The translations under genes were made by a program, and so were the position numbers. Shown in pieces: positions 38,172-61,202 of a stretch of 64,000 bases of DNA (positions within the stretch are counted from its first letter, which is position 1; each line of letters starts with the position of its first letter). The notes beneath the pieces are model-generated. The model was given only the letters and a program-made list of their open reading frames with translations. It ran no database searches and was not told where the DNA came from. The stretch is from positions 124,001 to 188,000 of the IMG/VR virus record IMGVR_UViG_3300012931_000759. One strand, written 5' to 3'.

Positions 38172-38348
38172 ATGATAGTGCCGAACACGCGGCGCCTAAA
38201 ACGCTTCGCGGTGATATACAAGGGAAGATCTTGCGGCCCGACCACGTCGTGGCCGCAAACCATTTGGTTTGATAAGGAGGAGGAGTACGATGAGGCGGTT
38301 CGCAAGCTGAAGACGCTGGTCGTGGATCTGAATGCCAATGCCGATTAG
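38172..38348 (+). CDS. Small 58-aa hypothetical protein (below the ORF-track cutoff)
   Basis: ATG 38172 to TAG 38348 fills the gap before the terminase (MIVPNTRRLKRF...). Confidence 0.4.
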   Translation: MIVPNTRRLKRFAVIYKGRSCGPTTSWPQTIWFDKEEEYDEAVRKLKTLVVDLNANAD

Positions 38349-44454: not shown

Positions 44455-44907
44455 ATGGATCGTTCGGAACTCTTGTTTAGGGACGGCTGCCGCAAATGGC
44501 ATGCCTACTTCGAGCGGTGCGCGAACGATGGTCGGATGGCCGAGATTCCGCATCTTATCAGGAAAATCGCGCAATACCTGGATGCCTGGAAGGGTGGCCT
44601 CGTGGCCGCTCATCGCAAGACGCAGGAGGCTGAAAAGTACCTCCTGGAGTGCCGTCAGAAGGAGGCCTCGATCCAGTCTCGGCTGAGGCTGCTGGGGCAG
44701 CTCGCCGCCACCATGGATAGCAGATTTGCCGAGAGGAGTCAGCAGGAGCGTTTTGTCAGGAGGGAGCGCGCGCTAGCGGCGGCCGAAACCTGGAGGCTGG
44801 TGGAGGGAAAGAAGCGGGAGGAATCCGAGCGGGAAAGGCTCGAGAGGGCTGAGAGGCACATGGCCGCACAAGAGCAGGAAGGCAGATCCGGAGGCGACAA
44901 TGAATAG
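44455..44907 (+). CDS. Hypothetical coiled-coil protein
   Basis: Fills the gap after the portal. Confidence 0.65.
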   Translation: MDRSELLFRDGCRKWHAYFERCANDGRMAEIPHLIRKIAQYLDAWKGGLVAAHRKTQEAEKYLLECRQKEASIQSRLRLLGQLAATMDSRFAERSQQERFVRRERALAAAETWRLVEGKKREESERERLERAERHMAAQEQEGRSGGDNE

Positions 44908-46081
44908 GGAAATAACATTTGCCAAGATCGCCGCTATGGCGCAGCTGCTGGACGATCACGGGCTACACGACGACGCCACAGTTATGGATGAAGTGCTGGA
45001 GGCGGCCGCGTTTCCCGGCATCCTCAAGGAGGCAGGATTGTGGAAGAACATCTTGTCCAGGCTGAGCGGCTGGGCGCGTAAGGTCCTTTTTAGTGAGTAT
45101 CGCGAGATGTACGATATGGCTGAGGAGGCCCAGAACGCACTCGATGAGCGCATCGAGGCACTCCAGGATGCCAACAAGGAACTCAAGGCCATGCTGTCGC
45201 GTCACGAGCTTCCCGAATGGCGCAAGAATATTGCTACCATCATCGCTGGTGTCGGCGAGAATGCGGATGAGGTCATGTCCGACTATGATTCGCTCCACGC
45301 GAAGATGACGGCGCGTCTGCTGAAGCTCGCCCCGGCGGCCAAAAAGAGGGAAAAGAAGCCAACAACGCCCGCGCTGCTACCGAAAGAGGAGGGGGAAAAG
45401 GAGGAGCCCAAGTCCCCAGAGAAGGCCATAGAAGAGACCTTAGTTCCCGAAAAACCGGCCGAGCCAACCAGCATCCCGGAGGAGCCGATTCCCCTGACCG
45501 AGGTCAAAAAGAAGCCGACGCCGGAAGCGCCCCCGGAGCCTGCGCCAGCCCCGAAGCCAACTCTCGCTCCGGTAGCTCCGCTACCCAACTGGAAAAAAGA
45601 GAGGTTCGGCACTAGCGGCAAACATGGCTGGGAATGGGAATGGGAAGTGTCACCTGACAACAACCAGCTGCGCCTTCTGAAGAGCCAGCTGGCTGCTGCC
45701 TCCAGCGGCAAGGGGAAGGTCCTACATAGGCATGGGGATAAGTACCGCCCGACCGGTGGCACGTCCAGCATTAAGCTGCGTAAACTCATGGGCGGCACGT
45801 TTTGGGAGATGGACGACGACCCCTCTGATCCAAACATGGTGATCCTGACGCGTACGGAAGAGGTTGTACCTTTTCCGCTGTCGATGCGCCAGGAGCCGGT
45901 CGAACAGGCCAAGAAGCTTAAGGAGCTCGGCAAGTCTTCCAAAGAGCGGATGAACCGACTTGTGACCATTGCTGTCGGCAGATCGGCCGGGGAAGAGATG
46001 AGCGAGGAGGAGAAGCTCGACGTGGCCGCCGAGGCTCTGCTCGAGGGTTTCGAATCCGAGGAGACCGAGGAGGAAATTTAG
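44900..46081 (+). CDS. Hypothetical putative head protein with N-terminal helical tag
   Basis: AKIAAMAQLLDDHGLHDDATVMD..LKEA; Pro/Glu/Lys-rich linker; acidic tail. Confidence 0.8.
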   Translation: MNREITFAKIAAMAQLLDDHGLHDDATVMDEVLEAAAFPGILKEAGLWKNILSRLSGWARKVLFSEYREMYDMAEEAQNALDERIEALQDANKELKAMLSRHELPEWRKNIATIIAGVGENADEVMSDYDSLHAKMTARLLKLAPAAKKREKKPTTPALLPKEEGEKEEPKSPEKAIEETLVPEKPAEPTSIPEEPIPLTEVKKKPTPEAPPEPAPAPKPTLAPVAPLPNWKKERFGTSGKHGWEWEWEVSPDNNQLRLLKSQLAAASSGKGKVLHRHGDKYRPTGGTSSIKLRKLMGGTFWEMDDDPSDPNMVILTRTEEVVPFPLSMRQEPVEQAKKLKELGKSSKERMNRLVTIAVGRSAGEEMSEEEKLDVAAEALLEGFESEETEEEI

Positions 46082-46083
46082 TT

Positions 46084-49000
46084 ATGGCGTGGCCATCCCT
46101 TTCGCGACGCGCTTCCCCCGGCATATCCCCGGTGGCCCTGATGCGCCTGACGGAGATTGATGATCCTGATGAACTACTCAAAAAGTTCAACAGAGATGAT
46201 ATTATAGTAGAACATAAATACGATGGCTGGAAGGCGCAGATCATCAAGGACGGGGAAAAGGTCCGCATCTTCAGCAGGCGCGGCGAGGAGGTCACTGGGA
46301 ACTTCCCGGCGATCGCCAAGGAGATGGTTGGTCTTCCTGACGGTACCCTTGTCGAGGGCGAGCTGGTCTACTGGGACAAGGGCAAACAGGATGTGACGAA
46401 GGTAACGTCCCTTGCCGGAAGCTCGGTCGACAAGGCCTTGGAGAAAGTGAAGGGGCTGCCCGGCAAGATGAAGCTCCATATCTACGACATCCTGTGGCTC
46501 AAGGGCAAAAACGTGGCCGACAGACCCTTCTCCGAGAGGCGCAAGCTGCTTGAGTCGGCTGTGAAGACCTCCGATACGGTCCTCCTGACAAAGCAGTACC
46601 CTTTCGCCAAGTGGCAGAATGCCATGAACACGGCAGTCGGCCAAGGTGGCGAGGGCATCGTACTCAAGCTCAAAGGCACCAAGTACCAGTACAAGCCCAA
46701 GGGCGAGTCCGAGCCAAAACCAAAAGATACGATGTGGAAGTATAAGGGCGGGGCTGGCAAGCACGACTCCGACGACTATGTGGTCTACGGCACGACCAAG
46801 AGCAAGACCGGCAAGCTCATGGCGCAGTTCGGCCAGTACTACAAGGGCAAGCTGTACGCCATCAGCGAGATCGACAACTTCTCGGCCGAGAACGAAGCCG
46901 AGATCGAGAAGCGCCTGAAAAAGGGTCCGTTCGTCATCGAAATTGGTTTCCAGGAGCGCGTGCCGGGCGGGCTGCGGCACCAGAAGTTTCTCAGGTTTCG
47001 GGACGACAAAAAGCCCAAGGATGCCACCATGCACGAATTCCATGCGGAGCATATCGGCGAGTTCGAACCAGCCAAGATGGAGCGGAAAGCAATGTTTGCG
47101 CTGGCGGGTACTCCCGATCTCGCCAAACTTGTTACGACGCTGGAACGGGCGGTTGGAAAAACAGACCCCATGAAGACGGGACCGACAAGGATCGGCGACG
47201 TGGGTGGTGTGGATGGCGACAAACTGTTCCAGCTCGTATCCAAACTTGAATCGAACGGTAGGACAGATGTTGTAGGAGACGCTGGAACGTCCTTTGGACC
47301 GACACAAATTCATGGGCCCTACCTCCTGGCCAGGCTTGCTGGAATGTCCGGCGCGCAGGCGGCCACCGGCTTGTCGCCCGATGAGATGCGCAAACTCTCC
47401 TCTTCCTGGCTGGACACCCTGAGGCAGCTTCGCGGCGCGCGCGTTTGGAAAGAGGTTCCAGTAGATCAGGACGAGGCGCGGAGATTACCTAGGATCAAGC
47501 GCCTGGAGAAGACCTTTATCCGCAGGCCGGATATGGTCATCGAGCAGAGGGACGGCCGGTATGTCGGTCGCATCTTGGATCTGGACGCCCTGCGAAGCCT
47601 GGGCTTCGATGTCGACTCGCAGATCTTCAGGAACGCCTTGCGCAGGATCTACGCGGAGTACATCACCGACAATGTCGCACTTAGCGGCCTGGCCCAGGCC
47701 CATCTGGGCTCCTTGGCCCCCGAGGCCTTCTACAAGTTCAAAAGGCAGTTCAACCCCGCCGGTATCCGGAAGAACAAGCCCCTAGCATCCCTGCTGGAGA
47801 GGGCCTCAACTAGCGACCTAACCAGCAGGATCGCTGCCGTGGTCCGGATGGTCGAGAAATCCGGGTACGACACGACTGCGCCGGGCGCGTTCAGCATCCC
47901 GCAGCTGGTCTTCATCGCCAACGGGAGCGGTATAGGGCGGGTCCAGCAGTTCCTCATGGACAGGAAGCCCTTCGCGCCGGGGAACTTACACTACCTACAG
48001 AGCCCCAGGTTTAAAGCCGCCATGAGCGCCTTTGTGAAAAACGATCCCGATCTTCGTGGAATGGCCACCCAGCTGCTCGCCGGGCTTCCTTCCGGCGACG
48101 GCATAGCTGGCTTTAAGGGGGAGGTTGCCGCTCGCATCGCGGCGCTGCTCGGGGCGGACAGCGAAGAGATCAGCCGGTCCGATGCAGTGAGGATGTTAAC
48201 GTTCGCCGACGGCCATCCAGATCGAGGGCGTGGCCGCTATCCGCGCTGGAATCCGGCCCTCCAGGCCCGCGAGATCATGAACTTGGTCGACCGCTGGCTG
48301 AACTATGAGAACATCCGGCCAATTGACCTGAAGGCGGTGGGCGTGACGCTCATTCGCGTCGACAGGGAGCAGGATCCGCCAAAGCTCGTCCTCTGGATCA
48401 TGGGGGACATTCAGGCGCTACAACGCCTGCTGCCGAGAAAGATGTGGGGCATGCCCGTTGTTCTACACTCCGACATCCCGAGGGCGACAACGGAGCTACC
48501 GGCCGTCACGGAGTTCGAGGAGGAACCGACGCTCGTTGACGTGGAGTCAAGAATGCCGACTAAGCTGTTCCAGGAGTACAGTGATCTCCTGGTGCGGGTA
48601 CGCGCCGAACTAAAGAGGACGCACAGGCACGTTCCCGAGGATCAGCTAAGACGTACGGTCTTTCTACACATTGCCGAGGAGCTGGGATACGATCTCGGGG
48701 AGCTGGAGAGAACCCTGGGTGAGCACGCCTGGCTCAGATTCTCCCATTGGCAGCCTCCTTTGTCCAAGCTGGCGATGGGCAATCGTGGCGTGCTCGCGTT
48801 CCCTGGACAGTACGCTGAGGATATCAAATCCGGCAAGATGGAACGGACGATCAGGCCTGGTGACATGCCGGTCGAGCCGGAGGAAGTGGTAGACGCTATC
48901 ACCTATTCGGGAGGACCTATTTGCCGGATCAAGATTCTGCTTAAGGAGATCATGAGCCTGCCGCGTCTCGCCAAGGCGTTCGGCAAGCATGTGGCCAGGT

Positions 49001-49980
49001 CCCTCGAGCACCGTTTCGGGCCGGACAGGCGCTTTATGGTCATCCGTTTCACTCGCTTCGGGGAGCAGGATGCCGACGACGGTGAACTTGACGAGAAAAA
49101 GCGCGGCGAGATCCTGATCGACAAGGATGGGATCGAACTCACGCGCGGGCAGATCTACGACCACTACGCCAAACCAGCGATCCGCAAACAGATCATGTCC
49201 CGCATCAAAGGCAAGCCTGTGCTAGTCTATCTTGGTGTGGGCAAGAACGAGAAGATCTTGAAGCGCAACCATGACAGTAAACCCATCGTCATTTCCAGCG
49301 ATGACCCAAAAGGGGATGGAGACAGTGGAAATTACTGGTACTGGGTCAAACGTCGGCTATTGGCTATTCATCAAGTGTTCGGTACGAAAACAGGTATTGG
49401 TTTTGTCGACCTGGATCTACATGGCGGATACCCACTCGATAAGAGCAAGGAGTACGCTAGGAAGGCAGTTGCGGCCATCAAGGAAAAGTATGGCGTTCAG
49501 CCGAAGGTCTACCAGAGTGGCGGCACTGGGCTCCATGTGGAGTTTGAGCTTGGCAAGGAGGTTGGTATCGACGGCCTGCGCAAGGAGTTGCGTGAGCTGC
49601 TCGACAAACTGAACGAGGATTTCGAGGGCGCGACGACCGGCCTTGTGAAGGGAAAAGGTATGCGGACGGATGTGAGTACACTTCACAACAAGGGCAGCCT
49701 ACGTGTGCCTGGTTCATTGGGTGAAACTTGGGGCAAGATGAAAAAGTCTTTGTCCCAATCGACCGATGACGATTATCAGAATGGGCAATTTGGTGGCAAA
49801 TATTCGGACACTGGCCCATTTGGCGATGGTGGTTCTATTGTGCCTATGCCCTATCAGTCTTCGGCTCCCGAACAGGTCGGAGCTGCGACGGCCTCTGAGA
49901 GAATCAAGTTATTCCGAATTGTTGCGCAGCAGTACGATGATGAAGTGAAGCCTGGAACAATAGCTCCTGGAAAATTTTGA
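46084..49980 (+). CDS. Mosaic protein: ATP-dependent DNA ligase + lysozyme/transglycosylase-like + unknown + ASCH + LigD-type primase-polymerase
   Basis: EHKYDG, EGELV, YDIL, EGIVLK, LRH..F.RFRDDK; LESNG..GDAG.SFGPTQI; LAFPGQYAEDIKSGK..TIR; FVDLD, SGGTGLHV, RVPGS. Confidence 0.85.
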   Translation: MAWPSLSRRASPGISPVALMRLTEIDDPDELLKKFNRDDIIVEHKYDGWKAQIIKDGEKVRIFSRRGEEVTGNFPAIAKEMVGLPDGTLVEGELVYWDKGKQDVTKVTSLAGSSVDKALEKVKGLPGKMKLHIYDILWLKGKNVADRPFSERRKLLESAVKTSDTVLLTKQYPFAKWQNAMNTAVGQGGEGIVLKLKGTKYQYKPKGESEPKPKDTMWKYKGGAGKHDSDDYVVYGTTKSKTGKLMAQFGQYYKGKLYAISEIDNFSAENEAEIEKRLKKGPFVIEIGFQERVPGGLRHQKFLRFRDDKKPKDATMHEFHAEHIGEFEPAKMERKAMFALAGTPDLAKLVTTLERAVGKTDPMKTGPTRIGDVGGVDGDKLFQLVSKLESNGRTDVVGDAGTSFGPTQIHGPYLLARLAGMSGAQAATGLSPDEMRKLSSSWLDTLRQLRGARVWKEVPVDQDEARRLPRIKRLEKTFIRRPDMVIEQRDGRYVGRILDLDALRSLGFDVDSQIFRNALRRIYAEYITDNVALSGLAQAHLGSLAPEAFYKFKRQFNPAGIRKNKPLASLLERASTSDLTSRIAAVVRMVEKSGYDTTAPGAFSIPQLVFIANGSGIGRVQQFLMDRKPFAPGNLHYLQSPRFKAAMSAFVKNDPDLRGMATQLLAGLPSGDGIAGFKGEVAARIAALLGADSEEISRSDAVRMLTFADGHPDRGRGRYPRWNPALQAREIMNLVDRWLNYENIRPIDLKAVGVTLIRVDREQDPPKLVLWIMGDIQALQRLLPRKMWGMPVVLHSDIPRATTELPAVTEFEEEPTLVDVESRMPTKLFQEYSDLLVRVRAELKRTHRHVPEDQLRRTVFLHIAEELGYDLGELERTLGEHAWLRFSHWQPPLSKLAMGNRGVLAFPGQYAEDIKSGKMERTIRPGDMPVEPEEVVDAITYSGGPICRIKILLKEIMSLPRLAKAFGKHVARSLEHRFGPDRRFMVIRFTRFGEQDADDGELDEKKRGEILIDKDGIELTRGQIYDHYAKPAIRKQIMSRIKGKPVLVYLGVGKNEKILKRNHDSKPIVISSDDPKGDGDSGNYWYWVKRRLLAIHQVFGTKTGIGFVDLDLHGGYPLDKSKEYARKAVAAIKEKYGVQPKVYQSGGTGLHVEFELGKEVGIDGLRKELRELLDKLNEDFEGATTGLVKGKGMRTDVSTLHNKGSLRVPGSLGETWGKMKKSLSQSTDDDYQNGQFGGKYSDTGPFGDGGSIVPMPYQSSAPEQVGAATASERIKLFRIVAQQYDDEVKPGTIAPGKF

Positions 49981-50025
49981 ATATCAGTTTGTGTAAATAT
50001 TTGAGATCGCTCAACATTATGGAGT

Positions 50026-53000
50026 GTGGTGCTGATGGTCAGCCTTCGTAGACGAATCCTCATGCTGGTGGCCCCGAAAGGGTTCTTTGAACCCGAATAT
50101 TCGGCATCACGTGCCGTGTTTGCCGATAGGGGCATCGATGTGGCCGTGGCCACGGCCGGTAAGTCGGCTGTGAGTGCGCAGGGCACAACCATCAGGGTCG
50201 ACCTTGACGTAGCGGACGCTGACGCAAAGGACTTCGACGCACTGTTTGTGGTCGGCGGCAAAGGTATGATCGAGTTTTCGGACGACAAGGCCGCTAAGCG
50301 CATCCTGCGCAAGTTTGTGCGCGTCGGCAAGCCGGTAGCCATGATCTGTCACGCCCCGCTCTTGGCGGCAAAGGCGAAGGTTGCTGCCGGTCGGCAGATG
50401 ACCGGATGGCCAGAGATCCGTCCCGATATGGTGGCCTCCGGAGCCAAGTGGACCGGCATGCCGGTGGAGCGGGACGGCGATCTGTTTACAGCCGTGGGAC
50501 CGGAGGATGCCGAATCCCTCGCCGACATCCTGGTCCGGCGGATGGATGGTGCCCCGACGCTCTCCGAGGCAATGTTAGATGACAACGCCGCCATGCGCAA
50601 ATTGGCGCGCCTGTGGCGCGCCGCAGCAAGGCTCGACAAGCCGATGACGGACGAGGAGGCCGAGCGCTGGTTGACGGAGTTTGAGCGCAGGGACGAGGGC
50701 GAGGAGGAGCCACCTTCTGAACCTACCACTCCCAAGCCGGTTCTAGCACCCGCGCCGAAATCGGTCCCGGCGCTCGCCGCCAAACCCAAACCTGAACCAG
50801 AGTTTACGCCCGACCCAGAGAGGCGCGATCAGATCACACATAAGCCGAAAAACGAATGGAATATTGTGGTGGAGCTTCGGCCACCCCGCACAGACGGCGG
50901 CTGGCCGGAACTTCCCGAGACCCCTCCAGTCGGATTCCCGTTCCCAGCTGAGGCGCTGAAGGACAGCCCTTCCATCAGGGCGCTATTCCAGAAGCCTGAG
51001 ACCTGGCGCGCACTCAAAGAGATTGCCGCCAATCCCAACAAGAGTGGTACAATACAGTCATACCTCGTGCCGACGCTAGTGCTCGTTATCGGCAAGGCCT
51101 GGTGGGAGATCAACAAGCGTCGCAAGCAGCTCGGCAACGCGCCGTTCGGCCTTTTCTCGTCCGACGAGTACAAGACCATACAGGACGCCAATGTCCCCAT
51201 GGAGGAGACGCAGATTGGACGGGCCTTCATTGCGCTGATCAACTGGCAGGTTACCAAGATACTCCAGTTCTACCTCGCCACCGGCAAGATCGAGAATGCT
51301 CGGCTGGATGGCTATATCTATGACGCCCTGAACAAGCACATGGTGAACGATGCGGGCAAGCGGCACGGATTCGAACCCAAGCGCCAGCCCGCCTGTGCCT
51401 ACTGTCGCAGCAAGCGCGTCATAGAGACGACGCCTCCGTTCCTTTCGCAGATCGGGACGCACACTGTCCAGGAAAGGAATCTGACGCGAAGCCGTCCCCT
51501 GTTCAAGTGCCCAACCTGCGAGGATCTGATCGAGACCAAGGAACAGGAGCTTCGCCTGAAGGAACAGGGTGTCCGCAACGCGGAAGAGAGTTTGCGCGAT
51601 ATAGCCAAGAATGTCCGGAACACCAAGGACAATCTGACCAAGGATCCGGACAGTGCCGAGCTGAAGCAGCGCCTGGTGAACTATGAGGCTATGTTGGCCA
51701 GCTACCGCCCACAGGTAGAGGAACTTGCCAAGGAGCGCAACACCCTGAAGGGCGAGATCCAGAACAGGCGCAATATGATAGGCGTGCCTTATTCGCATCT
51801 CTCTTGTATTAACGAGGCCTGCCCAGGCGCCGCTATACCCCTCACGTTCGTGGACTGGGACAACTCTTTCTGGAAGACGCCTGCTGGAGATGTGGCCAGG
51901 CGTGACCTAGCCAGCTTCTACCACATCGAGAAGAGTCCCGAAGGTCAGAAGGCTGAGGATGCGCCACAGGAAAGCGTTCAGCCTACATCTGAGCGCGCCG
52001 GGAAAAAACCGCCCCCGTGGATGTGGCACATTCCGTTCCGCTGCCCGTTTGATGGGCTTGTTTTCACGCCGCATGAGGCATTCGGGAAGGGGCGTGTCGG
52101 CGAGGACGGGACAAGACTTGGTGGCTTGTTTGTTAACCCGCCTCGCGCCACTAGGTGGTGGAAGCCGATGTCTCTCGAGCAGCAGCGGATGCCCGATGAC
52201 GAGGGCCAGAAGCAGCGCATCGAGGAGATCCGGTCGTTGACCGGTATCGAAACCACCACGGACTCGCCGGATTTCCTGCGCTCTCAGGAGATGAAACAGG
52301 AGAACGCCTGGCTGGCGGACCGCCTGCGCGAGGATATCCTCCGGCAGAGGGAAAATTTTATGAAAGAGCGCGGAACGCTTGAGGGCCATCGCGAGGTCAA
52401 GCTCCGCAGGACTATGTTCGACGCTTTGCTTGAATGGGCATATCTACATCCCATACATCTTGTGGCATTCTATAGCGCGCGTTCCCAGGCTACACAGAAG
52501 CCGCAGACGCACGTGCCAGTCGGCACCGAGCCAGTTGTGGACGGAAAGAGTGGGGAAGTCAAGGAGCATCTCGACGAAAAGAACATTAAGATGTCCCCAA
52601 AGCAGGCCGAGCGGATCATCTCCGCAATCATACAGGTGTGGTTCGAGAAGATGCTGGCCGAGAAGGATGGGCTGACCATCCTCAAAGGTAGGCCGGGCAA
52701 AGGGCGTTCAGGCAAGCTCACGGGACAGGGCAACTACCTGGCCATCAAGGAAGTCGACGGCGTAGAGCCGGACGGCTTTTTTGTCACGACGGTACAGCGA
52801 GCGTTGGACGGGCAGCTCGAAGCGCTTTGTAATCTCCGCACAACCAGCCCTAAGACTCGCGGGGCCGGATACTACCCCGCTCCATGGATGGCGCTTGTAC
52901 AGGGTATCTGGGACTACGACGGCCCAGCCGAGCGAATGGGTATCTCTATGCCCCTCGTGGAGGGGCAGAAGCTGGTCGCGGGCAAGAGAAGCCATCTCCA

Positions 53001-55344
53001 CGAAATGGAGACCCACAACAGCCATGGCATCCGATTCGACCCCGAAACGACGCTGAAGGAGGGGGATCGCATTGTTGTGAAGGCCCTGCTGATGCCGCGT
53101 AACTCCTCCTGGCCTCCCAATAAGTTCGTTAGCCATATCCGGCAAGGTCTGAAGTGGGACATCGGCGATGCCAAGGTCTACTACTCGGCGCTGCGCCGCC
53201 GCCAGAAACCTAAACCCTCGGACGAGCAGGTTATGGCCTTCTGGACGAAAAAGATGCAAGAAGCCAACATGACCGAGAAACTTGAGAAGTTTTATGAGAC
53301 GGTATACGACAGGCTGCGCCACAAGGAGGACCTCTCGGCTTTCGAGATAAGGCTGTTGGAGCAGTTTGAGCAAGCCAAGGAACAGGAGGCGTCCGACACC
53401 ATGGTTTCCGAAGCCAAGGATCCCCTCGCAAAATACCAGGGCAAGCGCGAATTCGACAAGACCACGGAGCCGAAAGGTAAGGAGTCGGAGGGTGGGAACA
53501 GGTACCGCTTTGTCATCCAACTACACCATGCCAAGAAAGCGGGTGACCATTACGATTTACGCCTAGAGAACGACGAGGGCGCATTGTCGTCGTGGAGTAT
53601 CCCGAAGCACCGGCTACCCAAGGGCAAGGAGAAGTTGCTCGCTGTCAGGACCGAAGACCATCCGGTCGAATACCTGAAGTTCAAGGGCGAAATCCCGGCG
53701 GGCGAGTATGGGGTCGGCACGATGGAGATCCACGACTCGGGAACCTACGAGGAGATCGAGGCCGGCAAGACCAAGATCGTCTTCTGCTTGAAGGGAAAGA
53801 AGGAGAAGGGGGCCTACAAGTTATTCCGGGCAGGCGAGGGAAACAAATGGATGGTGATGGAACATACAGAAAATAAACAGGAAAAGAAAGAGGCAGCCTG
53901 TGGCTCGAGTGTAACTCTATTCTCCAAACGAATTGGCAGTGTTCCGTTGTCAAAGATGGCGGCGCACAGTGGTGCGATGTTGGCTCTCATGGCTCCGTCG
54001 GCCATTGCCAGGAAGATGCGCAAGGCCAAGATGGTAGAGGACGAAGATCTGTCTGATACCCTTCACATGACTCTGTTGTACCTCGGGAAAGCTGCTGACC
54101 TCAGCAAAGAGACGCTGGAAGCAGTCCGGAAGGCGGCAGAGAAGGTGTGCGAGCGGCACGACCCGCTAAAGATGGGTGTTTCGGGTGCCGGGACATTCAC
54201 TCCGGAAGAAGATGGCACTCCGGTATACGTGGTACCTAATGCGAAGGGATTGAGCGCTCTACAGGCCGACCTGGAGAATGTTATCGGCAGCATCGTCGAC
54301 CTGCCCTCTGAGCACGGCTGGGTTCCGCATATGACTGTATGCTACTGCCGCGACGGGAAACCGGAACTCCCAGACCTGACGGAGAAACTGGAGTGGACCG
54401 CTGATAAGGTGCGTCTACAGGCTGGTGACGAGAAGATCGCGGACATTCCCATTGGCCGCAGGAAAAAGGGTGGAAGCGAGCTTCCGCTGTCCAGGCGGGC
54501 TGCGCTGGAGCGGTTGCCGATAGCCGCTGATCCTGTAATGTGGACGGATGAACAGTTGGTGGAAGCCGTCCGTCGACCGGAACTGTTCGGAAACGACAAA
54601 GATCGGTATCGGGCAGCAGTCGAACAGTTGGCCAAACGCGGTCTGGTGAAAAAGGTGGAGCCAACAGACATCGGCGAATGGCGTGAGCGCGGTTGGTGGC
54701 TACTAATGTGGGCGGGGATCCCACTCGCTTTCTACAACAACGATGCTGCTGCCAGTATGGCTAAACGGCTGCTCGCAGAGGATTTCGCCAAGGACGGCAC
54801 GCAGCCTATTGCTGCGCGTAAGTTTGATCCGATCCATTCCCGTCTGCGTTGGCAACTCGACGAGGTCATGGATCTGGGCCCGGCCGAGGACTACGAGGAG
54901 GCTGATCACCGGCGCGGTAGGGCAGGAACGGCCGTGGATGAACTGGTTACGCATCCTATGTACGCAAAACGGCGCAGGGAATTCGCCGAGAAGGCATTGA
55001 ACATCGCCAAGGCTCCCGCTGGTTTCAGACCGTTCAAAGAGTCGGTTCCCTCAGGTGCGCGACCAACCGAAACTAACGCTGACGCAGCTGAGGCTCGCAT
55101 CACGGACATGCGGTTCGGTAACACCCTGCCGGAGTTTACTGGACCGCTGGTGGATTCCCAGGAGGCTGCGAAGGACGCCGGTGACGAACTGGTCGAGGAC
55201 ACCGCCAAGAGACTTGCCAAGCGGCTGGAGGCCGAGCGGGCCGGTCTAGATCCTGAAAAACTGGCGGACGACGATGCGCTGGAACTAGCCCTGATCGAGC
55301 CGGACGAGGTTCCGCTCTCGAAGCGGACGGAAACATACCAATAA
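50026..55344 (+). CDS. Mosaic protein: DJ-1/PfpI + multi-zinc-finger domain (paralogue of 10351..12372) + LigD 3'-phosphoesterase + 2H phosphoesterase + unknown domain
   Basis: AMICHAP; FVIQLHHA..HYDLRLE..SWSIPK..AVRTEDHP..Y..F.GEIP.GEYG.G; LHMTL and PHMTV. Confidence 0.85.
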   Translation: MVLMVSLRRRILMLVAPKGFFEPEYSASRAVFADRGIDVAVATAGKSAVSAQGTTIRVDLDVADADAKDFDALFVVGGKGMIEFSDDKAAKRILRKFVRVGKPVAMICHAPLLAAKAKVAAGRQMTGWPEIRPDMVASGAKWTGMPVERDGDLFTAVGPEDAESLADILVRRMDGAPTLSEAMLDDNAAMRKLARLWRAAARLDKPMTDEEAERWLTEFERRDEGEEEPPSEPTTPKPVLAPAPKSVPALAAKPKPEPEFTPDPERRDQITHKPKNEWNIVVELRPPRTDGGWPELPETPPVGFPFPAEALKDSPSIRALFQKPETWRALKEIAANPNKSGTIQSYLVPTLVLVIGKAWWEINKRRKQLGNAPFGLFSSDEYKTIQDANVPMEETQIGRAFIALINWQVTKILQFYLATGKIENARLDGYIYDALNKHMVNDAGKRHGFEPKRQPACAYCRSKRVIETTPPFLSQIGTHTVQERNLTRSRPLFKCPTCEDLIETKEQELRLKEQGVRNAEESLRDIAKNVRNTKDNLTKDPDSAELKQRLVNYEAMLASYRPQVEELAKERNTLKGEIQNRRNMIGVPYSHLSCINEACPGAAIPLTFVDWDNSFWKTPAGDVARRDLASFYHIEKSPEGQKAEDAPQESVQPTSERAGKKPPPWMWHIPFRCPFDGLVFTPHEAFGKGRVGEDGTRLGGLFVNPPRATRWWKPMSLEQQRMPDDEGQKQRIEEIRSLTGIETTTDSPDFLRSQEMKQENAWLADRLREDILRQRENFMKERGTLEGHREVKLRRTMFDALLEWAYLHPIHLVAFYSARSQATQKPQTHVPVGTEPVVDGKSGEVKEHLDEKNIKMSPKQAERIISAIIQVWFEKMLAEKDGLTILKGRPGKGRSGKLTGQGNYLAIKEVDGVEPDGFFVTTVQRALDGQLEALCNLRTTSPKTRGAGYYPAPWMALVQGIWDYDGPAERMGISMPLVEGQKLVAGKRSHLHEMETHNSHGIRFDPETTLKEGDRIVVKALLMPRNSSWPPNKFVSHIRQGLKWDIGDAKVYYSALRRRQKPKPSDEQVMAFWTKKMQEANMTEKLEKFYETVYDRLRHKEDLSAFEIRLLEQFEQAKEQEASDTMVSEAKDPLAKYQGKREFDKTTEPKGKESEGGNRYRFVIQLHHAKKAGDHYDLRLENDEGALSSWSIPKHRLPKGKEKLLAVRTEDHPVEYLKFKGEIPAGEYGVGTMEIHDSGTYEEIEAGKTKIVFCLKGKKEKGAYKLFRAGEGNKWMVMEHTENKQEKKEAACGSSVTLFSKRIGSVPLSKMAAHSGAMLALMAPSAIARKMRKAKMVEDEDLSDTLHMTLLYLGKAADLSKETLEAVRKAAEKVCERHDPLKMGVSGAGTFTPEEDGTPVYVVPNAKGLSALQADLENVIGSIVDLPSEHGWVPHMTVCYCRDGKPELPDLTEKLEWTADKVRLQAGDEKIADIPIGRRKKGGSELPLSRRAALERLPIAADPVMWTDEQLVEAVRRPELFGNDKDRYRAAVEQLAKRGLVKKVEPTDIGEWRERGWWLLMWAGIPLAFYNNDAAASMAKRLLAEDFAKDGTQPIAARKFDPIHSRLRWQLDEVMDLGPAEDYEEADHRRGRAGTAVDELVTHPMYAKRRREFAEKALNIAKAPAGFRPFKESVPSGARPTETNADAAEARITDMRFGNTLPEFTGPLVDSQEAAKDAGDELVEDTAKRLAKRLEAERAGLDPEKLADDDALELALIEPDEVPLSKRTETYQ

Positions 55345-55370: not shown

Positions 55371-55664
55371 ATGGGCATGGCTGAGTACATCGCGAAGAAA
55401 TTTATGGGCGAAGAAATCTGGGTCGACTTGGACGACGAGGCGGAGACTGTCGTATACAGTGAAGTATGGGCAAAAAATCGCGAAATAATTCGAGGCATTG
55501 TACGCACAGTTGAAGAAGGAGTGCTAGAATTCGAGATTCCCACCGTTGGTGTGATCTATATTAACTGTGACTGTATCAAAGTGCTCTGGAAACCAGGAAT
55601 TGATTGGCGAAAGGCAACAAAAGGATCTTTCACCAATCGTCTCCTTAGTGCCAACAGGCGATAA
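55371..55664 (+). CDS. Small beta-rich protein (possible Sm/LSm-like fold)
   Basis: IRGIVRTVEEGVLEF..VIYINCDCI strand pattern. Confidence 0.6.
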   Translation: MGMAEYIAKKFMGEEIWVDLDDEAETVVYSEVWAKNREIIRGIVRTVEEGVLEFEIPTVGVIYINCDCIKVLWKPGIDWRKATKGSFTNRLLSANRR

Positions 55665-55667: not shown

Positions 55668-56864
55668 ATGTCAAAAAAGAAGGCAACTCCCGATAACAAT
55701 CTACAATCTGTCAATCCTGAATTGGCGAAAGAGTGGCATCCGACCAAGAATGGGAGTCTGAAGCCGACAGAGGTCTTGCCGTATAGCCAAAAGAAAGTCT
55801 GGTGGAGTTGTGTCAAAGGGCACGAATGGTCTGCCGAGATAGGAAGCCGTTCACAAGGGTACAAATGTCCATATTGTTGGGGAAGATTTGCTACGCCCGA
55901 GAACAATCTTGCGATTATACATCCGGAAGTGGCCACAGAATGGCATCCGATGAAAAATGGCACCTTGCGCCCAATCGATGTGACACCATTGTCGAGCAAA
56001 AGGGTGTGGTGGAAATGTACCAATGGGCATGAAAGATGCTCAACGGTAAAAAGTCGTGTGCGCGCTAATGGATGTCCGTGTAAAAAAGGCAGGTTGTTTT
56101 CCCAAGAACACAGTCTCGCCGCACTTTTCCCCAAAGTAGCGAAACAATGGCATCCAACCAAGAATGGCCGCTTGGCGCCCTGCGATGTTGGCCCCAGATC
56201 AAACAAAATTGTATGGTGGATATGTGAACAAGGACATGAATGGAAAACATTCGTATATACGCGGACAGATGGATGGGGGTGTAGGATTTGTAGTGGGCGA
56301 GTGGCAACTTCCGAACACAATCTAGAAATCGCATTTTCTGACATAGCATTACAGTGGTGTTTAGTAAAAAATGGTTCTCTGAAACCTTGCGATGTAACCC
56401 CGCATTCAGGCACAAAAGTGTGGTGGAAATGTATAAACGGGCATGAATGGGAAGCGGCTATCTGTAACAGGACAAGCACCAACAAGACAGGATGTCCATA
56501 TTGTTCCACACGCGTCTCCAAGGGTTGTGTGAAATGGCTTGACAGCATTGGGTTGCCGAACGATAGCCAGCATCGAGAAGTGATATTGAAAGCGGGCAAA
56601 CACTGGTACTGTGTTGATGGGTTTGATAAAGATATAAACACAGTATATGAATATCTTGGAGACTTTTGGCACGGCAATCCTAATAGGTTTAAACCAACTG
56701 GTGTAAATCCACAATGTAAAGAAACATACGGGTCATTGTTGTTAGGAACAGTAGACAAGTTGAATAATATTTACAACGGCGGCTTCAAAATTATATATAA
56801 GTGGGAAAGTGCCGCCAATCATCAGGTATACAAGCCTGGAGTGATAAGCGCATCGGCGCATTGA
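55668..56864 (+). mobile_element. Putative homing endonuclease: four zinc-ribbon (DUF4379-like) repeats plus C-terminal nuclease
   Basis: 4x L...P..A.EWHP.KNG..VWW.C..GHEW..C..C; C-terminal VDG..VYEYLGDFWHG; AT-rich. Confidence 0.75.
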
Positions 56865-56873: not shown

Positions 56874-57581
56874 ATGGAGAAGCAGGCTAACATAGTCAAG
56901 ATCGCCTTCATCCGCAAAGTGAAAGGTAAGGGATGGTGCGTTTTTGCCCACCGCAAAACCAAAAGCGGAAAACGCCAGAATTTCGGATGCTACAAATCGA
57001 AGGCGGCCGCGAAAAAACGCCTTGGTCAGATCTATTTCTTCAAGGGTCGCGGAGCTTTGGATGGCATGATCGGCATTGCGGATGACTTGGATCGCAGGGG
57101 ACTTCTCCATTTCGCGGACGCCCTGATGGATAGTCTGGAGCAGATCGTGGCTGCCAGCCTAGGCGAGATATCTGAGCGCCCGGTCTCCGTGACCATCGGC
57201 AAGATCGCCTCACTGCTGGAGAAAAAGGGCGAGGCAGCGCTCGCAGAGCGGCTGGACAGTCTTCTGCCAGCCGTGCTGGATGTGGAGTGTGGCGGAGTTG
57301 ACTGCCCCGACTGCCCGGACATGGTGGTCGAGGCCGATCTCGGCCGCTGCGGCGGCATCACTAGGCAGGTGTCCGCCGACAAGCTGTATGCGATGGCGGC
57401 CCGCTGCCGCCAGATGTACCGCGAGGGCATGATAGACGAGAACAGCTTCGAATACAGGAAGTTCCGTGAGCTGCGCTATATGCTGCGCACTGGTTTCCTG
57501 TTCCCGCCCCCTGAGGGACAGGGCGTCCCAAAGGACGCCGCGAACTGGTGGGACCATTTCGAGAAGGAGGCGGGCGAATGA
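56874..57581 (+). CDS. Hypothetical putative head protein with basic N-terminal module and two helical tags
   Basis: EKQA/VKIA; IRK..GWCVF..NFGCY..AKKRL.QI.FFK; IADDLDRRG, IASLLEKKG. Confidence 0.8.
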   Translation: MEKQANIVKIAFIRKVKGKGWCVFAHRKTKSGKRQNFGCYKSKAAAKKRLGQIYFFKGRGALDGMIGIADDLDRRGLLHFADALMDSLEQIVAASLGEISERPVSVTIGKIASLLEKKGEAALAERLDSLLPAVLDVECGGVDCPDCPDMVVEADLGRCGGITRQVSADKLYAMAARCRQMYREGMIDENSFEYRKFRELRYMLRTGFLFPPPEGQGVPKDAANWWDHFEKEAGE

Positions 57582-60818: not shown

Positions 60819-61202
60819 ATGGCGACTCCACCGCTCTCCAAGAGGAGCAATTCCACACCGCTGCTTCCCATCTCGAAGCGGGCGCAGGATCCCGTGCGCC
60901 GCACGGCTGAGTCCATCCTGAAGATCATCACCTTCATCCTTTTCCGCGTGGCGCCGAAAGACAAGACACGATACCTACAGCGTATTAGAGGAAAAATACT
61001 AAGGATTCCAACAGGGCAAGTGAGTCTGAAAAAGTTGCCGCAAACAGCGGCCATTGGACAAGCTATCAGTTTGACCAAAAACATCTTGTCCGGTTTGAAC
61101 CCCTTCTTTGTCAAAAGAGTGGTGGACGAACTGGCGAACCTTATGCTTCTACAGGTGCCCGTTCGCCAGACTCTACCAATCCAGCGACCTAGGGTCCAAT
61201 GA
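60819..61202 (+). CDS. Small basic hypothetical protein with tandem PLSKRS/PISKRA N-terminal motifs
   Basis: MATPPLSKRSNSTPLLPISKRA; GGAGG upstream. Confidence 0.75.
   Translation: MATPPLSKRSNSTPLLPISKRAQDPVRRTAESILKIITFILFRVAPKDKTRYLQRIRGKILRIPTGQVSLKKLPQTAAIGQAISLTKNILSGLNPFFVKRVVDELANLMLLQVPVRQTLPIQRPRVQ

What the first reader, a model, noticed from the sequence alone, without database searches (positions are those of the whole stretch)
46084..55344. All three LigD (NHEJ) activities split across two adjacent giant mosaic proteins in the head module
Seen: an ATP-dependent ligase (~46130-47030) and a LigD-type AEP polymerase (~49100-49745) in ORF 46084, and a classic LigD 3'-phosphoesterase (~53419-53860) in ORF 50026. 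Established: bacterial LigD combines LIG, POL and PE domains and works with Ku to repair double-strand breaks. No Ku is visible in this window. Inference: a phage end-healing and sealing kit placed among head genes, rather than replication genes, may be injected with the DNA. It could repair restriction or CRISPR cuts, or circularise the genome before gene expression.
Basis: partly seen in the sequence, partly recalled or inferred. Interest (0 to 1): 0.85.

Follow-up and report, generated by a model that had tools for sequence, protein, structure and literature searches.

The report
Jumbo-phage head-module DNA repair polyproteins
Two giant neighbouring genes just after the portal gene of an uncultured 340-kb phage carry intact copies of all three enzyme activities of the bacterial break-repair enzyme LigD, on a conserved scaffold protein, and they are probably delivered with the phage DNA to mend or seal it, though delivery is not yet shown.

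Summary
ORF1 (46084-49980) has an ATP-dependent ligase with all six nucleotidyltransferase motifs. It also has a divergent primase-polymerase whose predicted fold matches LigD polymerase domains first (Foldseek E 1e-11).

The genes are not stray insertions. In 22 of 23 related loci the order is terminase, portal, a 393-aa gene, LIG-POL-(DJ-1)-PE, then DUF6897. The same content appears as one gene (2,594 aa), two genes (this window) or three. One relative has a compact LIG-POL-PE protein. In others the polymerase module is fused to topoisomerase IB, a CCA-adding enzyme, an SNF2 helicase, GGDEF or Acb1.

This fits the "polyvalent proteins" of phages (Iyer et al. 2017), which are thought to be injected with the DNA. 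That paper's main text never mentions LigD, and 50,697 GenBank phage records have no match to the polymerase or phosphoesterase.

Packaging into the virion, end joining and the absence of Ku remain inferences. Only 64 kb of the 340-kb contig was readable, and no Ku was found in it. Verdict: real, a new variant of a known kind, and of moderately high interest.

The parts
38332..40182 (+). Large terminase subunit, upstream anchor of the module
   Evidence: PHROG 675 at E 9e-58. About 24% identity to annotated TerL genes of GenBank phages. Relatives carry Pfam GpA_ATPase.
40195..44451 (+). Portal protein (1418 aa) with two intein-sized insertions
   Evidence: PHROG 16240 portal at E 1.6e-45. Hint and LAGLIDADG domains. 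The portal of L002 is 617 aa, with no insertion.
44455..44907 (+). 150-aa gene of unknown function, conserved in close relatives
   Evidence: No Pfam or PHROG hit. tblastn finds it in the same position in L006, L007 and L010.
44900..46081 (+). 393-aa gene of unknown function that always lies between the portal and the ligase
   Evidence: No Pfam, PHROG or NCBIfam hit. Atlas model has low confidence. Present in about 18 of the 23 related loci between the portal and LIG or MID1.
46084..49980 (+). ORF1, polyvalent protein 1 (1298 aa): LIG - MID1 - ASCH-like - POL - short tail
   Evidence: The ATG at 46084 is supported by homologues that align from residue 1.
46129..47088 (+). ATP-dependent ligase (nucleotidyltransferase plus OB domain, no N-terminal DNA-binding domain)
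   Evidence: Pfam E 1.4e-31. PDB 2hiv E 3e-20, against LigD LIG 1vs0 at E 1.7e-6. NCBIfam dnl1 scores 98 bits and NHEJ_ligase_lig 79.7 bits, both below cut-off. Motifs I, III, IIIa, IV, V and VI are unchanged in 27 of 27 sequences, except for one motif VI Arg that is Lys in two.
47185..48003 (+). MID1, a conserved domain of unknown fold class with an invariant Glu-Ser ... GD-G-SFG ... Q motif
   Evidence: Confident model (pLDDT 84) with no significant Foldseek match in PDB or BFVD. A transglycosylase resemblance is only a lead and was not supported by profiles. Found in 37 POL-bearing proteins.
48766..49053 (+). ASCH-like region (tentative)
   Evidence: PF04266 is pre-computed for homologues P0015, P0017, P0018 and P0043. 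The stretch is conserved. There was no PDB profile hit, and the window copy gave no ASCH hit in the Pfam scans.
49063..49773 (+). LigD-type primase-polymerase (AEP) module
   Evidence: Alignment A1 shows invariant D-x-D, SGG-G-H and R-x-D motifs. 19 of 19 members hit PF21686. The 16 best Foldseek PDB matches are all LigD POL, NHEJ polymerase or Prim-PolC. Only 340 representative clusters in 1.84 billion proteins match.
50026..55344 (+). ORF2, polyvalent protein 2 (1772 aa from GTG 50026; likely start ATG 50035 or 50062): DJ-1 - MID2 - PE - 2H - C-terminal region
50050..50553 (+). DJ-1/PfpI domain (deglycase, glyoxalase or cysteine peptidase family)
   Evidence: Pfam E 2.3e-34. PDB matches to DJ-1D and PfpI. 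The Cys108-His109 elbow is kept in 14 of 15 sequences.
50923..53325 (+). MID2, the conserved backbone: invariant Cys pairs flanking an ~85-residue coiled coil, rest unknown
   Evidence: Alignment A10. PDB profile search returns only coiled coils. No hydrophobic segment that looks membrane-spanning. In L001 it occurs with MID1 as a 1700-aa protein with no LIG, POL, DJ-1, PE or 2H match and no Pfam hit on record.
53425..53868 (+). LigD-type 3'-phosphoesterase (PE)
   Evidence: Pfam E 1.3e-25. PDB 3p43 at E 6e-30 and Pseudomonas LigD PE 2lj6 and 3n9b. NCBIfam 138.4 bits against a cut-off of 144. The His, His-x-Asp-x-Arg and His...Tyr residues are invariant in 14 of 14 sequences.
53959..54468 (+). 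2H (LigT/ThpR-like) phosphoesterase
   Evidence: Pfam 2_5_RNA_ligase2 at E 6.6e-16 and LigT_PEase at E 9e-6. Two H-x-T motifs at aa 1347 and 1435, invariant in 5 of 5 sequences. NCBIfam RNA 2',3'-cyclic phosphodiesterase scores 39 bits, below cut-off.
55371..55664 (+). DUF6897-like 97-aa gene, the constant downstream neighbour
   Evidence: Pfam E 7e-4. Same position in 18 loci.
56874..57581 (+). 235-aa conserved module gene of unknown function; fused to the C-terminus of the LIG-POL-PE protein P0022 in L001
   Evidence: No PDB, Pfam, PHROG or NCBIfam hit.

Best explanation
ORF1 and ORF2 are 'polyvalent' multi-enzyme proteins of an uncultured clade of huge (jumbo) phages. A conserved non-enzymatic backbone (MID1 and MID2) is encoded in the slot right after the portal gene. 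This backbone carries a set of enzymes that heal and seal nucleic-acid ends.

Shown:
- The set comprises an ATP ligase, a LigD-type polymerase, a LigD-type 3'-phosphoesterase, a 2H cyclic phosphodiesterase and a DJ-1/PfpI domain.
- All catalytic motifs are intact.
- The gene order is fixed across the clade.
- The same domains are fused, split and swapped among relatives.

Inferred:
- The proteins are built into the head and leave it with the DNA, as proposed for polyvalent proteins and as shown for P1 Dar, the N4 virion RNA polymerase and phiKZ head proteins.
- Once in the cell, the phosphoesterase and the 2H domain would clean blocked 3' ends (3'-phosphate, 2',3'-cyclic phosphate, ribonucleotide tracts).
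- The polymerase would fill gaps or add a ribonucleotide, and the ligase would seal.
- This would close nicks, gaps or cohesive ends of the incoming genome, or breaks made by host nucleases, before any phage gene is expressed.
- Ku would not be needed for nick or gap repair, or for sealing annealed cohesive ends.
For: - Domain identities.
- Catalytic residues are invariant across 5 to 27 homologues down to ~25-45% identity.
- The three LigD activities travel together. P0022 is LIG-POL-PE in 952 aa. P0042-47 carry LIG, POL and PE in one 2.6-3.0-kaa chain.
- Among 30 POL-bearing proteins, 19 also have PE and 13 have LIG.
- Synteny TerL - portal - g393 - [LIG..POL..PE] - DUF6897 - g235 holds in 22 of the 23 related loci; the 23rd has no upstream DNA.
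- The content appears as one, two or three genes.
- The backbone alone forms a 1700-aa protein in L001, where the enzyme triad is instead fused to the module gene g235.
- Other fusion partners are typical of polyvalent proteins: TopoIB, CCA-adding/HD, SNF2, GGDEF, GNAT, NUDIX, Acb1 (PMC5512222).
- An intein sits inside the PE catalytic motif in P0051, as inteins do in proteins under strong constraint.
- Co-injected head enzymes are documented in jumbo phages (PMC13282480).
- Mycobacteriophages Omega and Corndog use host LigD to circularise at cos sites (PMC12848934, citing Pitcher 2006).
- Relatives' terminases carry the lambda GpA-type ATPase domain. From my own knowledge, that type is associated with cohesive ends.
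Against: - There is no direct evidence of virion association. No cultured relative or proteome exists.
- No major capsid, scaffold or protease gene was recognised nearby.
- No MuF domain or confirmed cell-wall hydrolase domain is present. The transglycosylase lead failed profile tests.
- In L003 and L004 the ligase is a free-standing gene upstream of the terminase gene, so it need not be part of the backbone.
- Another phage lineage places POL-PE beside RNA polymerase genes, not head genes.
- The ligase could simply be the phage's general ligase.
- The 2H, ASCH-like and CCA-adding partners fit RNA substrates as well as DNA.
Confidence: 0.5

Rival explanations
1. The proteins are late-expressed cytoplasmic enzymes and are not packaged. 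They would mend nicks, gaps and blocked ends in replicated concatemers so that the terminase can package intact DNA. Alternatively they serve as the phage's general replication and repair ligase and gap-filling polymerase. Their place beside the terminase and portal genes would then reflect co-timing only.
For: - They lie in the same tightly packed + strand gene run as TerL and the portal.
- The ligase is a free-standing gene directly upstream of TerL in L003 and L004.
- The window also encodes a Pol III alpha, RecA, SbcCD-like and PD-(D/E)XK repair set, so the phage invests in DNA maintenance.
- No second ligase was seen in the window. This is a weak point, because one search lists only 25 of 46 families.
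Against: - It does not explain the ~1,100 residues of conserved non-enzymatic backbone.
- It does not explain the 2.6-3.8-kaa single chains.
- It does not explain the polyvalent-type partner domains (SNF2, GGDEF, GNAT, Acb1, TopoIB).
- It does not explain the fusion of the triad to the module gene g235.
Confidence: 0.25
2. The target is RNA or signalling nucleotides rather than DNA. The kit would repair tRNAs or other RNAs cut by host anticodon nucleases or toxins: 2H and PE heal 2',3'-cyclic phosphate ends, the ligase seals, and the CCA-adding enzyme in relatives rebuilds 3' ends. Alternatively the 2H domain degrades cyclic or 2'-5' nucleotide signals, as Acb1 does.
For: - The 2H domain has both H-x-T motifs.
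- There is an ASCH-like region.
- Relatives fuse the same POL module to CCA-adding/HD enzymes and to Acb1.
- A PolyA_pol-type nucleotidyltransferase gene is a constant member of the neighbourhood.
- PMC5512222 proposes RNase or signal-degrading roles for 2H domains of polyvalent proteins.
- LigD PE acts on ribonucleotide 3' ends (established biochemistry, from my own knowledge).
Against: - The ligase belongs to the DNA-ligase family and has an OB domain and motif VI.
- The RNA_ligase model scores below its cut-off.
- The polymerase fold matches DNA break-repair polymerases first.
- Topoisomerase IB, a DNA enzyme, is a recurrent partner.
- 2H is the least constant member, present in 6 of 174 POL proteins.
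Confidence: 0.12
3. This is canonical Ku-dependent end joining. The enzymes work as a split LigD together with a Ku encoded elsewhere in the 340-kb genome or supplied by the host, joining true double-strand breaks. The mechanism would be as in bacteria, regardless of whether the proteins are packaged.
For: - All three LigD activities are present and are co-inherited.
- Phages are known to combine their own Ku with host LigD (PMC12848934).
- Only 64 of 340 kb could be searched here.
Against: - No Ku was found in the window by Pfam (the last partial).
- A phmmer search with the verified Ku of Corndog also found none.
- No Ku was called in any of the ~20-kb flanks of related loci where Pfam hits are on record.
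- The ligase and polymerase fall far below the LigD equivalog cut-offs.
Confidence: 0.08

Closest known systems
Bacterial DNA ligase D (LigD) of the Ku-LigD end-joining pathway
   Same: The same three catalytic domain types are present: ATP ligase, AEP polymerase and 3'-phosphoesterase. The same active-site residues are kept. Relatives place all three in one chain (P0022, LIG-POL-PE).
   Different: - In this window the activities are split over two genes and embedded in 1.3-1.8-kaa proteins with extra domains (DJ-1, 2H, ASCH-like, backbone).
- They are encoded by a phage, next to the portal gene.
- The ligase is nearer to Lig1 and archaeal ligases.
- The polymerase belongs to a rare, divergent clade that a sequence profile barely links to LigD (E 0.016), although the fold does (E 1e-11).
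- No Ku was found.
Polyvalent proteins of phages and conjugative elements (Iyer, Burroughs, Anand, de Souza, Aravind 2017; PMC5512222)
   Same: Giant proteins combine several unrelated enzymatic domains. They are encoded beside portal and terminase genes, and domains are extensively shuffled, fused and split. Partner domains seen here (2H, PrimPol-type AEP, SNF2, GGDEF, GNAT, NUDIX) are on that paper's list or of its type.
   Different: - The main text of that paper contains no mention of LigD, and its three uses of 'ligase' did not include a DNA ligase in the passages shown.
- It states that the 2H domains of polyvalent proteins were never seen with RNA ligases; here 2H sits in the gene next to an ATP-dependent DNA-type ligase, and in one chain with POL and PE in relatives.
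- No MuF domain was detected in the neighbouring 393-aa gene (Pfam). A zincin-like HExxH motif was seen only in the g497 consensus and was not tested.
Virion-delivered phage enzymes: P1 DarB, N4 virion RNA polymerase, phiKZ head and inner-body proteins
   Same: These are very large enzymes or enzyme sets that are packed in the head and released with the DNA to act before phage gene expression (PMC5512222, PMC13282480).
   Different: Those act in anti-restriction or transcription. None is a ligase, gap-filling polymerase and end-healing set. Delivery is demonstrated for them and only inferred here.
Mycobacteriophages Corndog and Omega (phage Ku plus host LigD)
   Same: A phage uses LigD chemistry on its own genome, to circularise it at short cohesive ends (PMC12848934, citing Pitcher et al. 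2006).
   Different: The division of labour is the opposite. Those phages bring Ku and borrow the host's LigD. This phage brings the LigD activities, and no Ku is seen in the window.
Repair enzymes packaged in virions of large eukaryotic DNA viruses (e.g. the polymerase X, ligase and AP endonuclease set of African swine fever virus; poxvirus virion topoisomerase IB). This item is from my own knowledge and was not checked here.
   Same: The concept is the same: a large virus carries polymerase, ligase, end-cleaning enzymes or topoisomerase IB inside the particle to service the incoming genome.
   Different: The enzymes and hosts are unrelated, and the enzymes are separate small proteins rather than giant fusions.

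Membership tests
Bacterial LigD | ATP-dependent ligase domain with nucleotidyltransferase motifs I, III, IIIa, IV, V and OB-domain motif VI | tested here: met
   Pfam E 1.4e-31. The K-x-D-G lysine and the other motif residues are unchanged in 27 of 27 sequences, apart from one motif VI Arg that is Lys in two.
Bacterial LigD | Ligase domain belongs to the LigD/NHEJ ligase equivalog | tested here: not met
   NCBIfam NHEJ_ligase_lig scores 79.7 bits against a cut-off of 227.75. The whole-LigD model scores 71 against 373, and the generic dnl1 model scores higher. PDB matches to archaeal and Lig1 ligases reach E 3e-20, against E 1.7e-6 for Mycobacterium LigD LIG.
Bacterial LigD | AEP polymerase domain of the LigD/NHEJ clade with D-x-D, SG-G-H and a third Asp | tested here: met
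   Invariant motifs. 19 of 19 members hit PF21686. The 16 best Foldseek matches are all LigD POL, NHEJ polymerase or Prim-PolC. By sequence the window copy is below the Pfam cut-off (16 bits against 27.4).
Bacterial LigD | 3'-phosphoesterase domain with the His/His-Asp-Arg/His-Tyr active site | tested here: met
   Pfam E 1.3e-25. PDB LigD PE structures match. Residues are invariant in 14 of 14 sequences. NCBIfam scores 138.4 against 144 for the window copy, and 147.8 (passing) for P0022.
Bacterial LigD | The activities reside in one polypeptide | tested here: not met
   In the window they are split between ORF1 and ORF2, with two stops and a new start between. The feature is met in relatives P0022 and P0042-47.
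Bacterial LigD | Partner Ku protein | tested here: inconclusive
   No Ku in the window by Pfam (the last shows only 25 of 46 families). A phmmer search with Corndog gp87, verified as Ku at 167.7 bits, also found none. About 276 kb of the contig was not readable, and a scan of the viral collection with that Ku found only itself.
Bacterial LigD | Joins double-strand DNA ends | not testable with these tools
   Needs biochemistry or genetics.
Polyvalent proteins (PMC5512222) | Two or more domains of disparate biochemical activity in one large polypeptide | tested here: met
   ORF1 has ligase plus polymerase (plus an ASCH-like region). ORF2 has DJ-1, PE and 2H.
Polyvalent proteins (PMC5512222) | Encoded by a phage or conjugative element in a neighbourhood of virion or packaging genes | tested here: met
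   The genes follow TerL and the portal in the window and in 22 of the 23 related loci. Contigs come from IMG/VR and are up to 442 kb long.
Polyvalent proteins (PMC5512222) | Combinatorial domain architectures across relatives | tested here: met
   One-, two- and three-gene versions exist. Domain orders include LIG-POL-PE, POL-PE, TopoIB-POL, TopoIB-CCA-HD-POL and POL-2H-PE.
Polyvalent proteins (PMC5512222) | Association with a processing peptidase (zincin-like) or with MuF | tested here: inconclusive
   No MuF or zincin Pfam hit in ORF1, ORF2 or g393. DJ-1/PfpI could be a cysteine peptidase. An HExxH motif appears in the consensus of the nearby g497 family but was not tested.
Polyvalent proteins (PMC5512222) | Delivered into the host with the DNA | not testable with these tools
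   No cultured relative and no virion proteome.
2H phosphoesterases (LigT/ThpR) | Two H-x-T/S motifs in a duplicated fold | tested here: met
   H-M-T at aa 1347 and 1435, invariant in 5 of 5 sequences. Pfam E 6.6e-16.
DJ-1/PfpI | Nucleophile-elbow cysteine (Cys-His) | tested here: met
   Cys108-His109 is kept in 14 of 15 sequences. Pfam E 2.3e-34.
Lytic transglycosylase (SLT/GEWL) in MID1 | Significant profile or fold match to a lysozyme-like domain with a catalytic Glu | tested here: inconclusive
   No Pfam hit in 18 members at E up to 5, and no PDB profile hit. Foldseek gives only sub-threshold SLT/GEWL rows (E 0.4-3). The Atlas score of 0.75 is at chance level. An invariant Glu-Ser ... G-SFG ... 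Q motif exists.

The most novel reading that the evidence does not exclude
A clade of huge phages packs a self-sufficient, Ku-independent DNA 'first-aid kit' in its head. The conserved zinc-ribbon and coiled-coil backbone (MID2) would act as the end-holding scaffold in place of Ku. It would present the phage genome's ends, nicks or nuclease cuts to the tethered phosphoesterase, polymerase and ligase, so that the genome is sealed or circularised within seconds of entry and before any phage gene is expressed. This would be a new counter-defence principle: repairing the damage rather than avoiding it.
Probability: 0.25. Interest if true: 0.85.

Novelty: new variant of a known kind. Interest (0 to 1): 0.68.

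Why it matters
If these proteins do travel with the DNA, they would be the first phage example of a virion-delivered DNA-repair machine. Known delivered proteins act in anti-restriction, transcription or end protection instead.

Such a machine would give a concrete and testable answer to how very large phage genomes survive entry. These genomes offer many targets to restriction enzymes, CRISPR nucleases and nickases, and they accumulate damage while dormant in the particle.

The finding also supplies natural variants of LigD chemistry that may work without Ku, including a compact LIG-POL-PE enzyme. These could be useful as end-joining reagents in bacteria that lack NHEJ. Finally, it extends the catalogue of polyvalent proteins to DNA ligase, LigD polymerase, LigD phosphoesterase, topoisomerase IB and CCA-adding enzymes.

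Tried and rejected
1. Reading ORF1 and ORF2 as one gene through a stop. They share a frame, but two TGA stops, a GGAG and an ATG lie between them, and relatives also have separate genes. Rejected.
2. Nearest known phage. There is no nucleotide match in 50,697 GenBank phages. Protein matches cover only the ligase, 2H and DJ-1 domains. The POL and PE domains have no match even at E 1.
3. A lytic transglycosylase in MID1, which would have argued for a virion role. The only support was an Atlas lead, a motif and sub-threshold Foldseek rows. Pfam and PDB profiles gave nothing and Foldseek against PDB was not significant. Left as an unsupported lead.
4. Finding the major capsid, scaffold or protease genes to firm up the 'head module'. 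The 235-, 374-, 393- and 497-aa genes gave no Pfam, PHROG or NCBIfam hits (for the 497-aa gene the Pfam output was only the truncated family list). The 497-aa gene proved to be a phosphatase-containing multidomain protein, not a capsid protein. The 235-aa and MID2 profiles found nothing informative in PDB.
5. Ku. None was found in the window. A collection scan with Corndog Ku finds only near-identical sequences, so the rest of the genome could not be checked.
6. Promoter and terminator scans around the genes were at chance level. There are no tRNA genes in the window.
7. Literature. There is no paper on a virion LigD or phage LigD phosphoesterase. The polyvalent-protein and jumbo-phage papers do not mention it.


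Full report
THE OBSERVATION

They share a reading frame but are separate genes. Between them lie a TGA stop, seven codons, a second TGA, a GGAG and an ATG at 50035. Public gene calls start ORF2 at 50035 or 50062 and ORF1 at 46141. Homologues that align from residue 1 support the ATG at 46084 for ORF1.

DOMAIN IDENTITIES

ORF1 begins with an ATP-dependent ligase.
- Pfam DNA_ligase_A_M matches at E 1.4e-31.
- PDB matches run through the OB domain and motif VI.
- There is no N-terminal DNA-binding domain.
- By sequence it is nearer to archaeal and Lig1-type ligases (E 3e-20) than to Mycobacterium LigD LIG (E 1.7e-6).
- It fails the NCBIfam NHEJ-ligase cut-off, scoring 79.7 bits against 227.75.

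The polymerase claim was the weakest on first test. The window copy gives only E 0.008-0.03 against Pfam LigD_Prim-Pol. Three further results settle it.
- Residues ~994-1230 form a discrete module that recurs, at 45-86% identity, in proteins with quite different surroundings.
- All 19 aligned copies hit LigD_Prim-Pol, the best at E 5e-9.
- The alignment-based AlphaFold model (pLDDT 86.8, pTM 0.81) has as its 16 best PDB matches only Mycobacterium and Pseudomonas LigD polymerase domains, the Methanocella NHEJ polymerase and Prim-PolC (E 1e-11 to 8e-9, TM 0.65-0.72). CRISPR-associated Prim-Pol, human PrimPol and archaeal PriS follow far behind.

The D-x-D, SGG-G-H and R-x-D motifs are invariant.

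ORF2 carries a textbook LigD 3'-phosphoesterase: Pfam E 1.3e-25, PDB 3p43 E 6e-30, and NCBIfam 138.4 bits against a cut-off of 144. One is an N-terminal DJ-1/PfpI domain (E 2.3e-34). The other is a 2H (LigT-like) phosphoesterase with both H-x-T motifs (E 6.6e-16).

An ASCH-like region just before the polymerase is tentative. It rests on pre-computed Pfam hits in homologues.

CATALYTIC RESIDUES

- Every ligase motif residue checked is unchanged in 27 of 27 homologous segments, except one motif VI Arg that is Lys in two.
- The phosphoesterase His, His-x-Asp-x-Arg and His...Tyr residues are invariant in 14 of 14.
- The two 2H motifs are invariant in 5 of 5.
- The DJ-1 Cys-His is present in 14 of 15.

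GENOMIC SETTING

The window comes from a 340,392-bp IMG/VR contig. Relatives lie on contigs of 116 to 442 kb, so this is an uncultured huge-phage clade. Its terminase is only ~24% identical to any GenBank phage terminase.

Upstream of ORF1 lie:
- the large terminase (PHROG E 9e-58);
- a 1418-aa portal gene (PHROG E 1.6e-45), swollen by two intein-sized insertions;
- a 150-aa gene;
- a 393-aa gene.

I mapped 19 window proteins or domains onto the 23 related loci fetched, one of which is the window's own contig. The order is TerL, portal, (g150), g393, LIG, MID1, POL, (DJ-1), MID2, PE, (2H), DUF6897, g235, all on one strand. This order holds in every locus that has upstream DNA, which is 22 of 23. 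These genes are therefore a fixed part of the packaging and head gene block of the clade, not a mobile insertion. No major capsid, scaffold or protease gene could be recognised, so 'head module' rests on the terminase and the portal.

ARCHITECTURE ACROSS RELATIVES

The same content appears in several forms.
- One gene: P0043, 2594 aa, LIG-MID1-ASCH-POL-DJ-1-MID2-PE.
- Two genes: this window.
- Three genes: L007, with products of 1268, 1376 and 698 aa.
- In L001 the two non-enzymatic stretches MID1 and MID2 form a 1700-aa protein with none of the enzyme domains mapped here. A compact 952-aa LIG-POL-PE protein follows, fused at its C-terminus to the module gene g235.
- In more distant loci the slot after the portal holds TopoIB-POL, a 2H protein and CCA-adding-HD-PE. 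The ligase there is a free-standing gene in front of the terminase.

A profile of the polymerase module finds only 340 representative clusters among 1.84 billion proteins, many of them 2-3.8 kaa long. Of 30 such proteins scanned, 19 also carry PE and 13 carry the ligase. Single cases add SNF2 helicase, GGDEF, GNAT, NUDIX, rubrerythrin and the anti-CBASS enzyme Acb1.

Two conclusions follow. Ligase, polymerase and phosphoesterase are kept together by selection through many rearrangements, which argues that they cooperate as they do in LigD. The carrier is a conserved backbone of unknown function onto which enzymes are grafted.

THE BACKBONE

MID1 gives a confident model (pLDDT 84) with no significant structural match. 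MID2 has invariant Cys pairs flanking an ~85-residue coiled coil and matches nothing else. Neither ORF has a hydrophobic segment of membrane-spanning type.

HOW IT MOST LIKELY WORKS

The architecture, the neighbourhood and the combinatorial shuffling match the 'polyvalent proteins' of Iyer et al. (PMC5512222). Those authors argue from P1 Dar proteins, the N4 virion RNA polymerase and plasmid primases that such proteins are delivered with the DNA. Jumbo phages are known to co-inject head enzymes (PMC13282480).

On that reading the proteins are built into the head. After ejection they would service the incoming genome in three steps, following established LigD and 2H biochemistry (from my own knowledge).
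- The 2H and PE domains convert blocked 3' ends (2',3'-cyclic phosphate, 3'-phosphate, ribonucleotide runs) to a ligatable 3'-OH.
- The polymerase fills gaps or adds a ribonucleotide.
- The ligase seals.

Possible substrates are nicks or gaps in virion DNA, cohesive ends to be closed for circularisation, or cuts made by host nucleases. Relatives' terminases carry the lambda GpA-type ATPase domain, which is compatible with cohesive ends. Mycobacteriophages Omega and Corndog do use LigD chemistry at cos sites (PMC12848934). Nick, gap and cos sealing would not need Ku.

The domain identities, intact active sites, co-inheritance and fixed position are shown. Packaging, the substrate and independence from Ku are inferred. 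I put this explanation at about 0.5.

RIVALS

(a) The proteins are late cytoplasmic enzymes that mend concatemers before packaging, or that serve as the phage's general ligase and gap filler. The free-standing ligase beside the terminase in L003 and L004 favours this. The conserved backbone and the polyvalent-type partner domains argue against it. Confidence 0.25.

(b) The target is RNA or signalling nucleotides. The 2H, ASCH-like, CCA-adding and Acb1 partners favour this. The DNA-ligase family, the break-repair polymerase fold and topoisomerase IB argue against it. Confidence 0.12.

(c) This is ordinary Ku-dependent end joining, with a Ku encoded elsewhere or supplied by the host. No Ku was found in the window by Pfam (the last incomplete). 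A phmmer search with Corndog gp87, which I verified as Ku at 167.7 bits, also found none. None was called in the flanks of relatives. However, ~276 kb of the contig could not be read. Confidence 0.08.

COMPARISON WITH WHAT IS KNOWN

This is not a member of the LigD family in the strict sense.
- The activities are split in this window.
- The ligase and polymerase fail the equivalog thresholds.
- No Ku was found.

It does contain LigD-type POL and PE domains, and it probably works like LigD at the chemical level. It meets the descriptive criteria for polyvalent proteins, except for the untestable one of delivery.

The main text of the polyvalent-protein paper has no mention of LigD. It also states that its 2H domains were never seen with RNA ligases. 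Two jumbo-phage surveys do not describe anything like this. Full-text searches found no paper on a virion or phage LigD. Among 50,697 GenBank phage records there is no tblastn match to this POL or PE even at E 1. I therefore rate it a new variant of a known kind.

VERDICT

The finding is real, apparently undescribed, and gives a directly testable hypothesis: repair enzymes delivered in the virion. Interest 0.68. The main weakness is that every step from 'encoded next to the portal gene' to 'injected and joining ends' is inference.

Noticed in passing
window 40195-44451: The portal gene is 1418 aa, against 617 aa in relative L002. It holds two ~370-aa insertions with Hint and LAGLIDADG domains, so it probably contains two inteins. 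Relatives carry none, one or two (portals of 617, 1001 and 1053 aa).
   Followed up: partly
window 55668-56864, 58150-59016, 60141-60815, 61199-61855: Four free-standing homing-endonuclease-type genes lie within 6 kb of the head-gene block: a four-fold DUF4379 zinc-finger/HNH-like gene, NUMOD3 plus Vsr-like, GIY-YIG plus NUMOD3, and HNH. In close relatives L006 and L007 the flanking genes are contiguous, without them.
   Followed up: partly
window 61852-63345: The 497-aa gene, first suspected to be the capsid gene, is another multidomain enzyme. Its family consensus has an HExxH motif, a stretch resembling a peptidoglycan-binding domain, and an H-C-x5-R cysteine-phosphatase loop. A PDB profile search hits Siw14 and the periplasmic phosphatase TpbA at E 4e-5. 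A cell-wall-binding, peptidase-like protein in this block would fit a set of virion-delivered proteins.
   Followed up: partly
P0051 residues ~2700-3052 (relative; no window coordinates): A LAGLIDADG intein-like insert splits the phosphoesterase domain just before its catalytic His-x-Asp-x-Arg motif. P0163, and locus L011 (two PE matches ~1.2 kb apart), show a similar split.
   Followed up: partly
L001 3355-8457 and 10001-12859: In this NCBI metagenome contig the MID1+MID2 backbone is a 1700-aa protein with no LIG, POL, DJ-1, PE or 2H match and no Pfam hit on record. A compact LIG-POL-PE protein (P0022, 952 aa) lies after DUF6897 and is fused to a homologue of the window's 235-aa gene.
   Followed up: yes
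L026 10001-13057: In another phage lineage a POL - P-loop (AAA_17, possibly a kinase) - PE protein of 1018 aa sits between multisubunit RNA polymerase genes, next to an SNF2 helicase and an RNase H. LigD-type POL-PE modules in big phages are therefore not confined to the portal neighbourhood.
   Followed up: no
window 34059-34829: A 256-aa PolyA_pol-type nucleotidyltransferase gene (E 1.7e-7) lies a constant ~4 kb upstream of the terminase gene, here and in L002, L003 and L004. Relatives fuse a fuller CCA-adding/HD enzyme to the POL module.
   Followed up: no
window 50923-53325 (ORF2 aa 300-1100): The backbone MID2 has invariant cysteine pairs (C-x-x-C twice, then H-x-x-C-x4-C and a further Cys) on either side of an ~85-residue coiled coil. 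This layout is loosely reminiscent of zinc-hook or zinc-ribbon bridging proteins. PDB matches are to coiled coils only.
   Followed up: partly
window 1-28000: The left part of the window encodes a cell-like DNA maintenance and chaperone set: Pol III alpha with a PHP domain, RecA, FtsK/SpoIIIE, a PD-(D/E)XK/Cas4-like nuclease, an SMC/SbcC-like ATPase with a Metallophos protein, a separate Prim-Pol (PF09250), DnaJ, trigger factor, UDP-glucose dehydrogenase and dNMP kinase. The families were seen only as a pooled list and were not assigned to individual ORFs.
   Followed up: no
window 57548-58153: A DUF5661 domain (E 3e-9) lies at the C-terminus of a 201-aa module gene. The same domain ends the 1608-aa POL-CCA-HD protein P0025, which hints at a shared C-terminal tag or interaction domain.
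   Followed up: no
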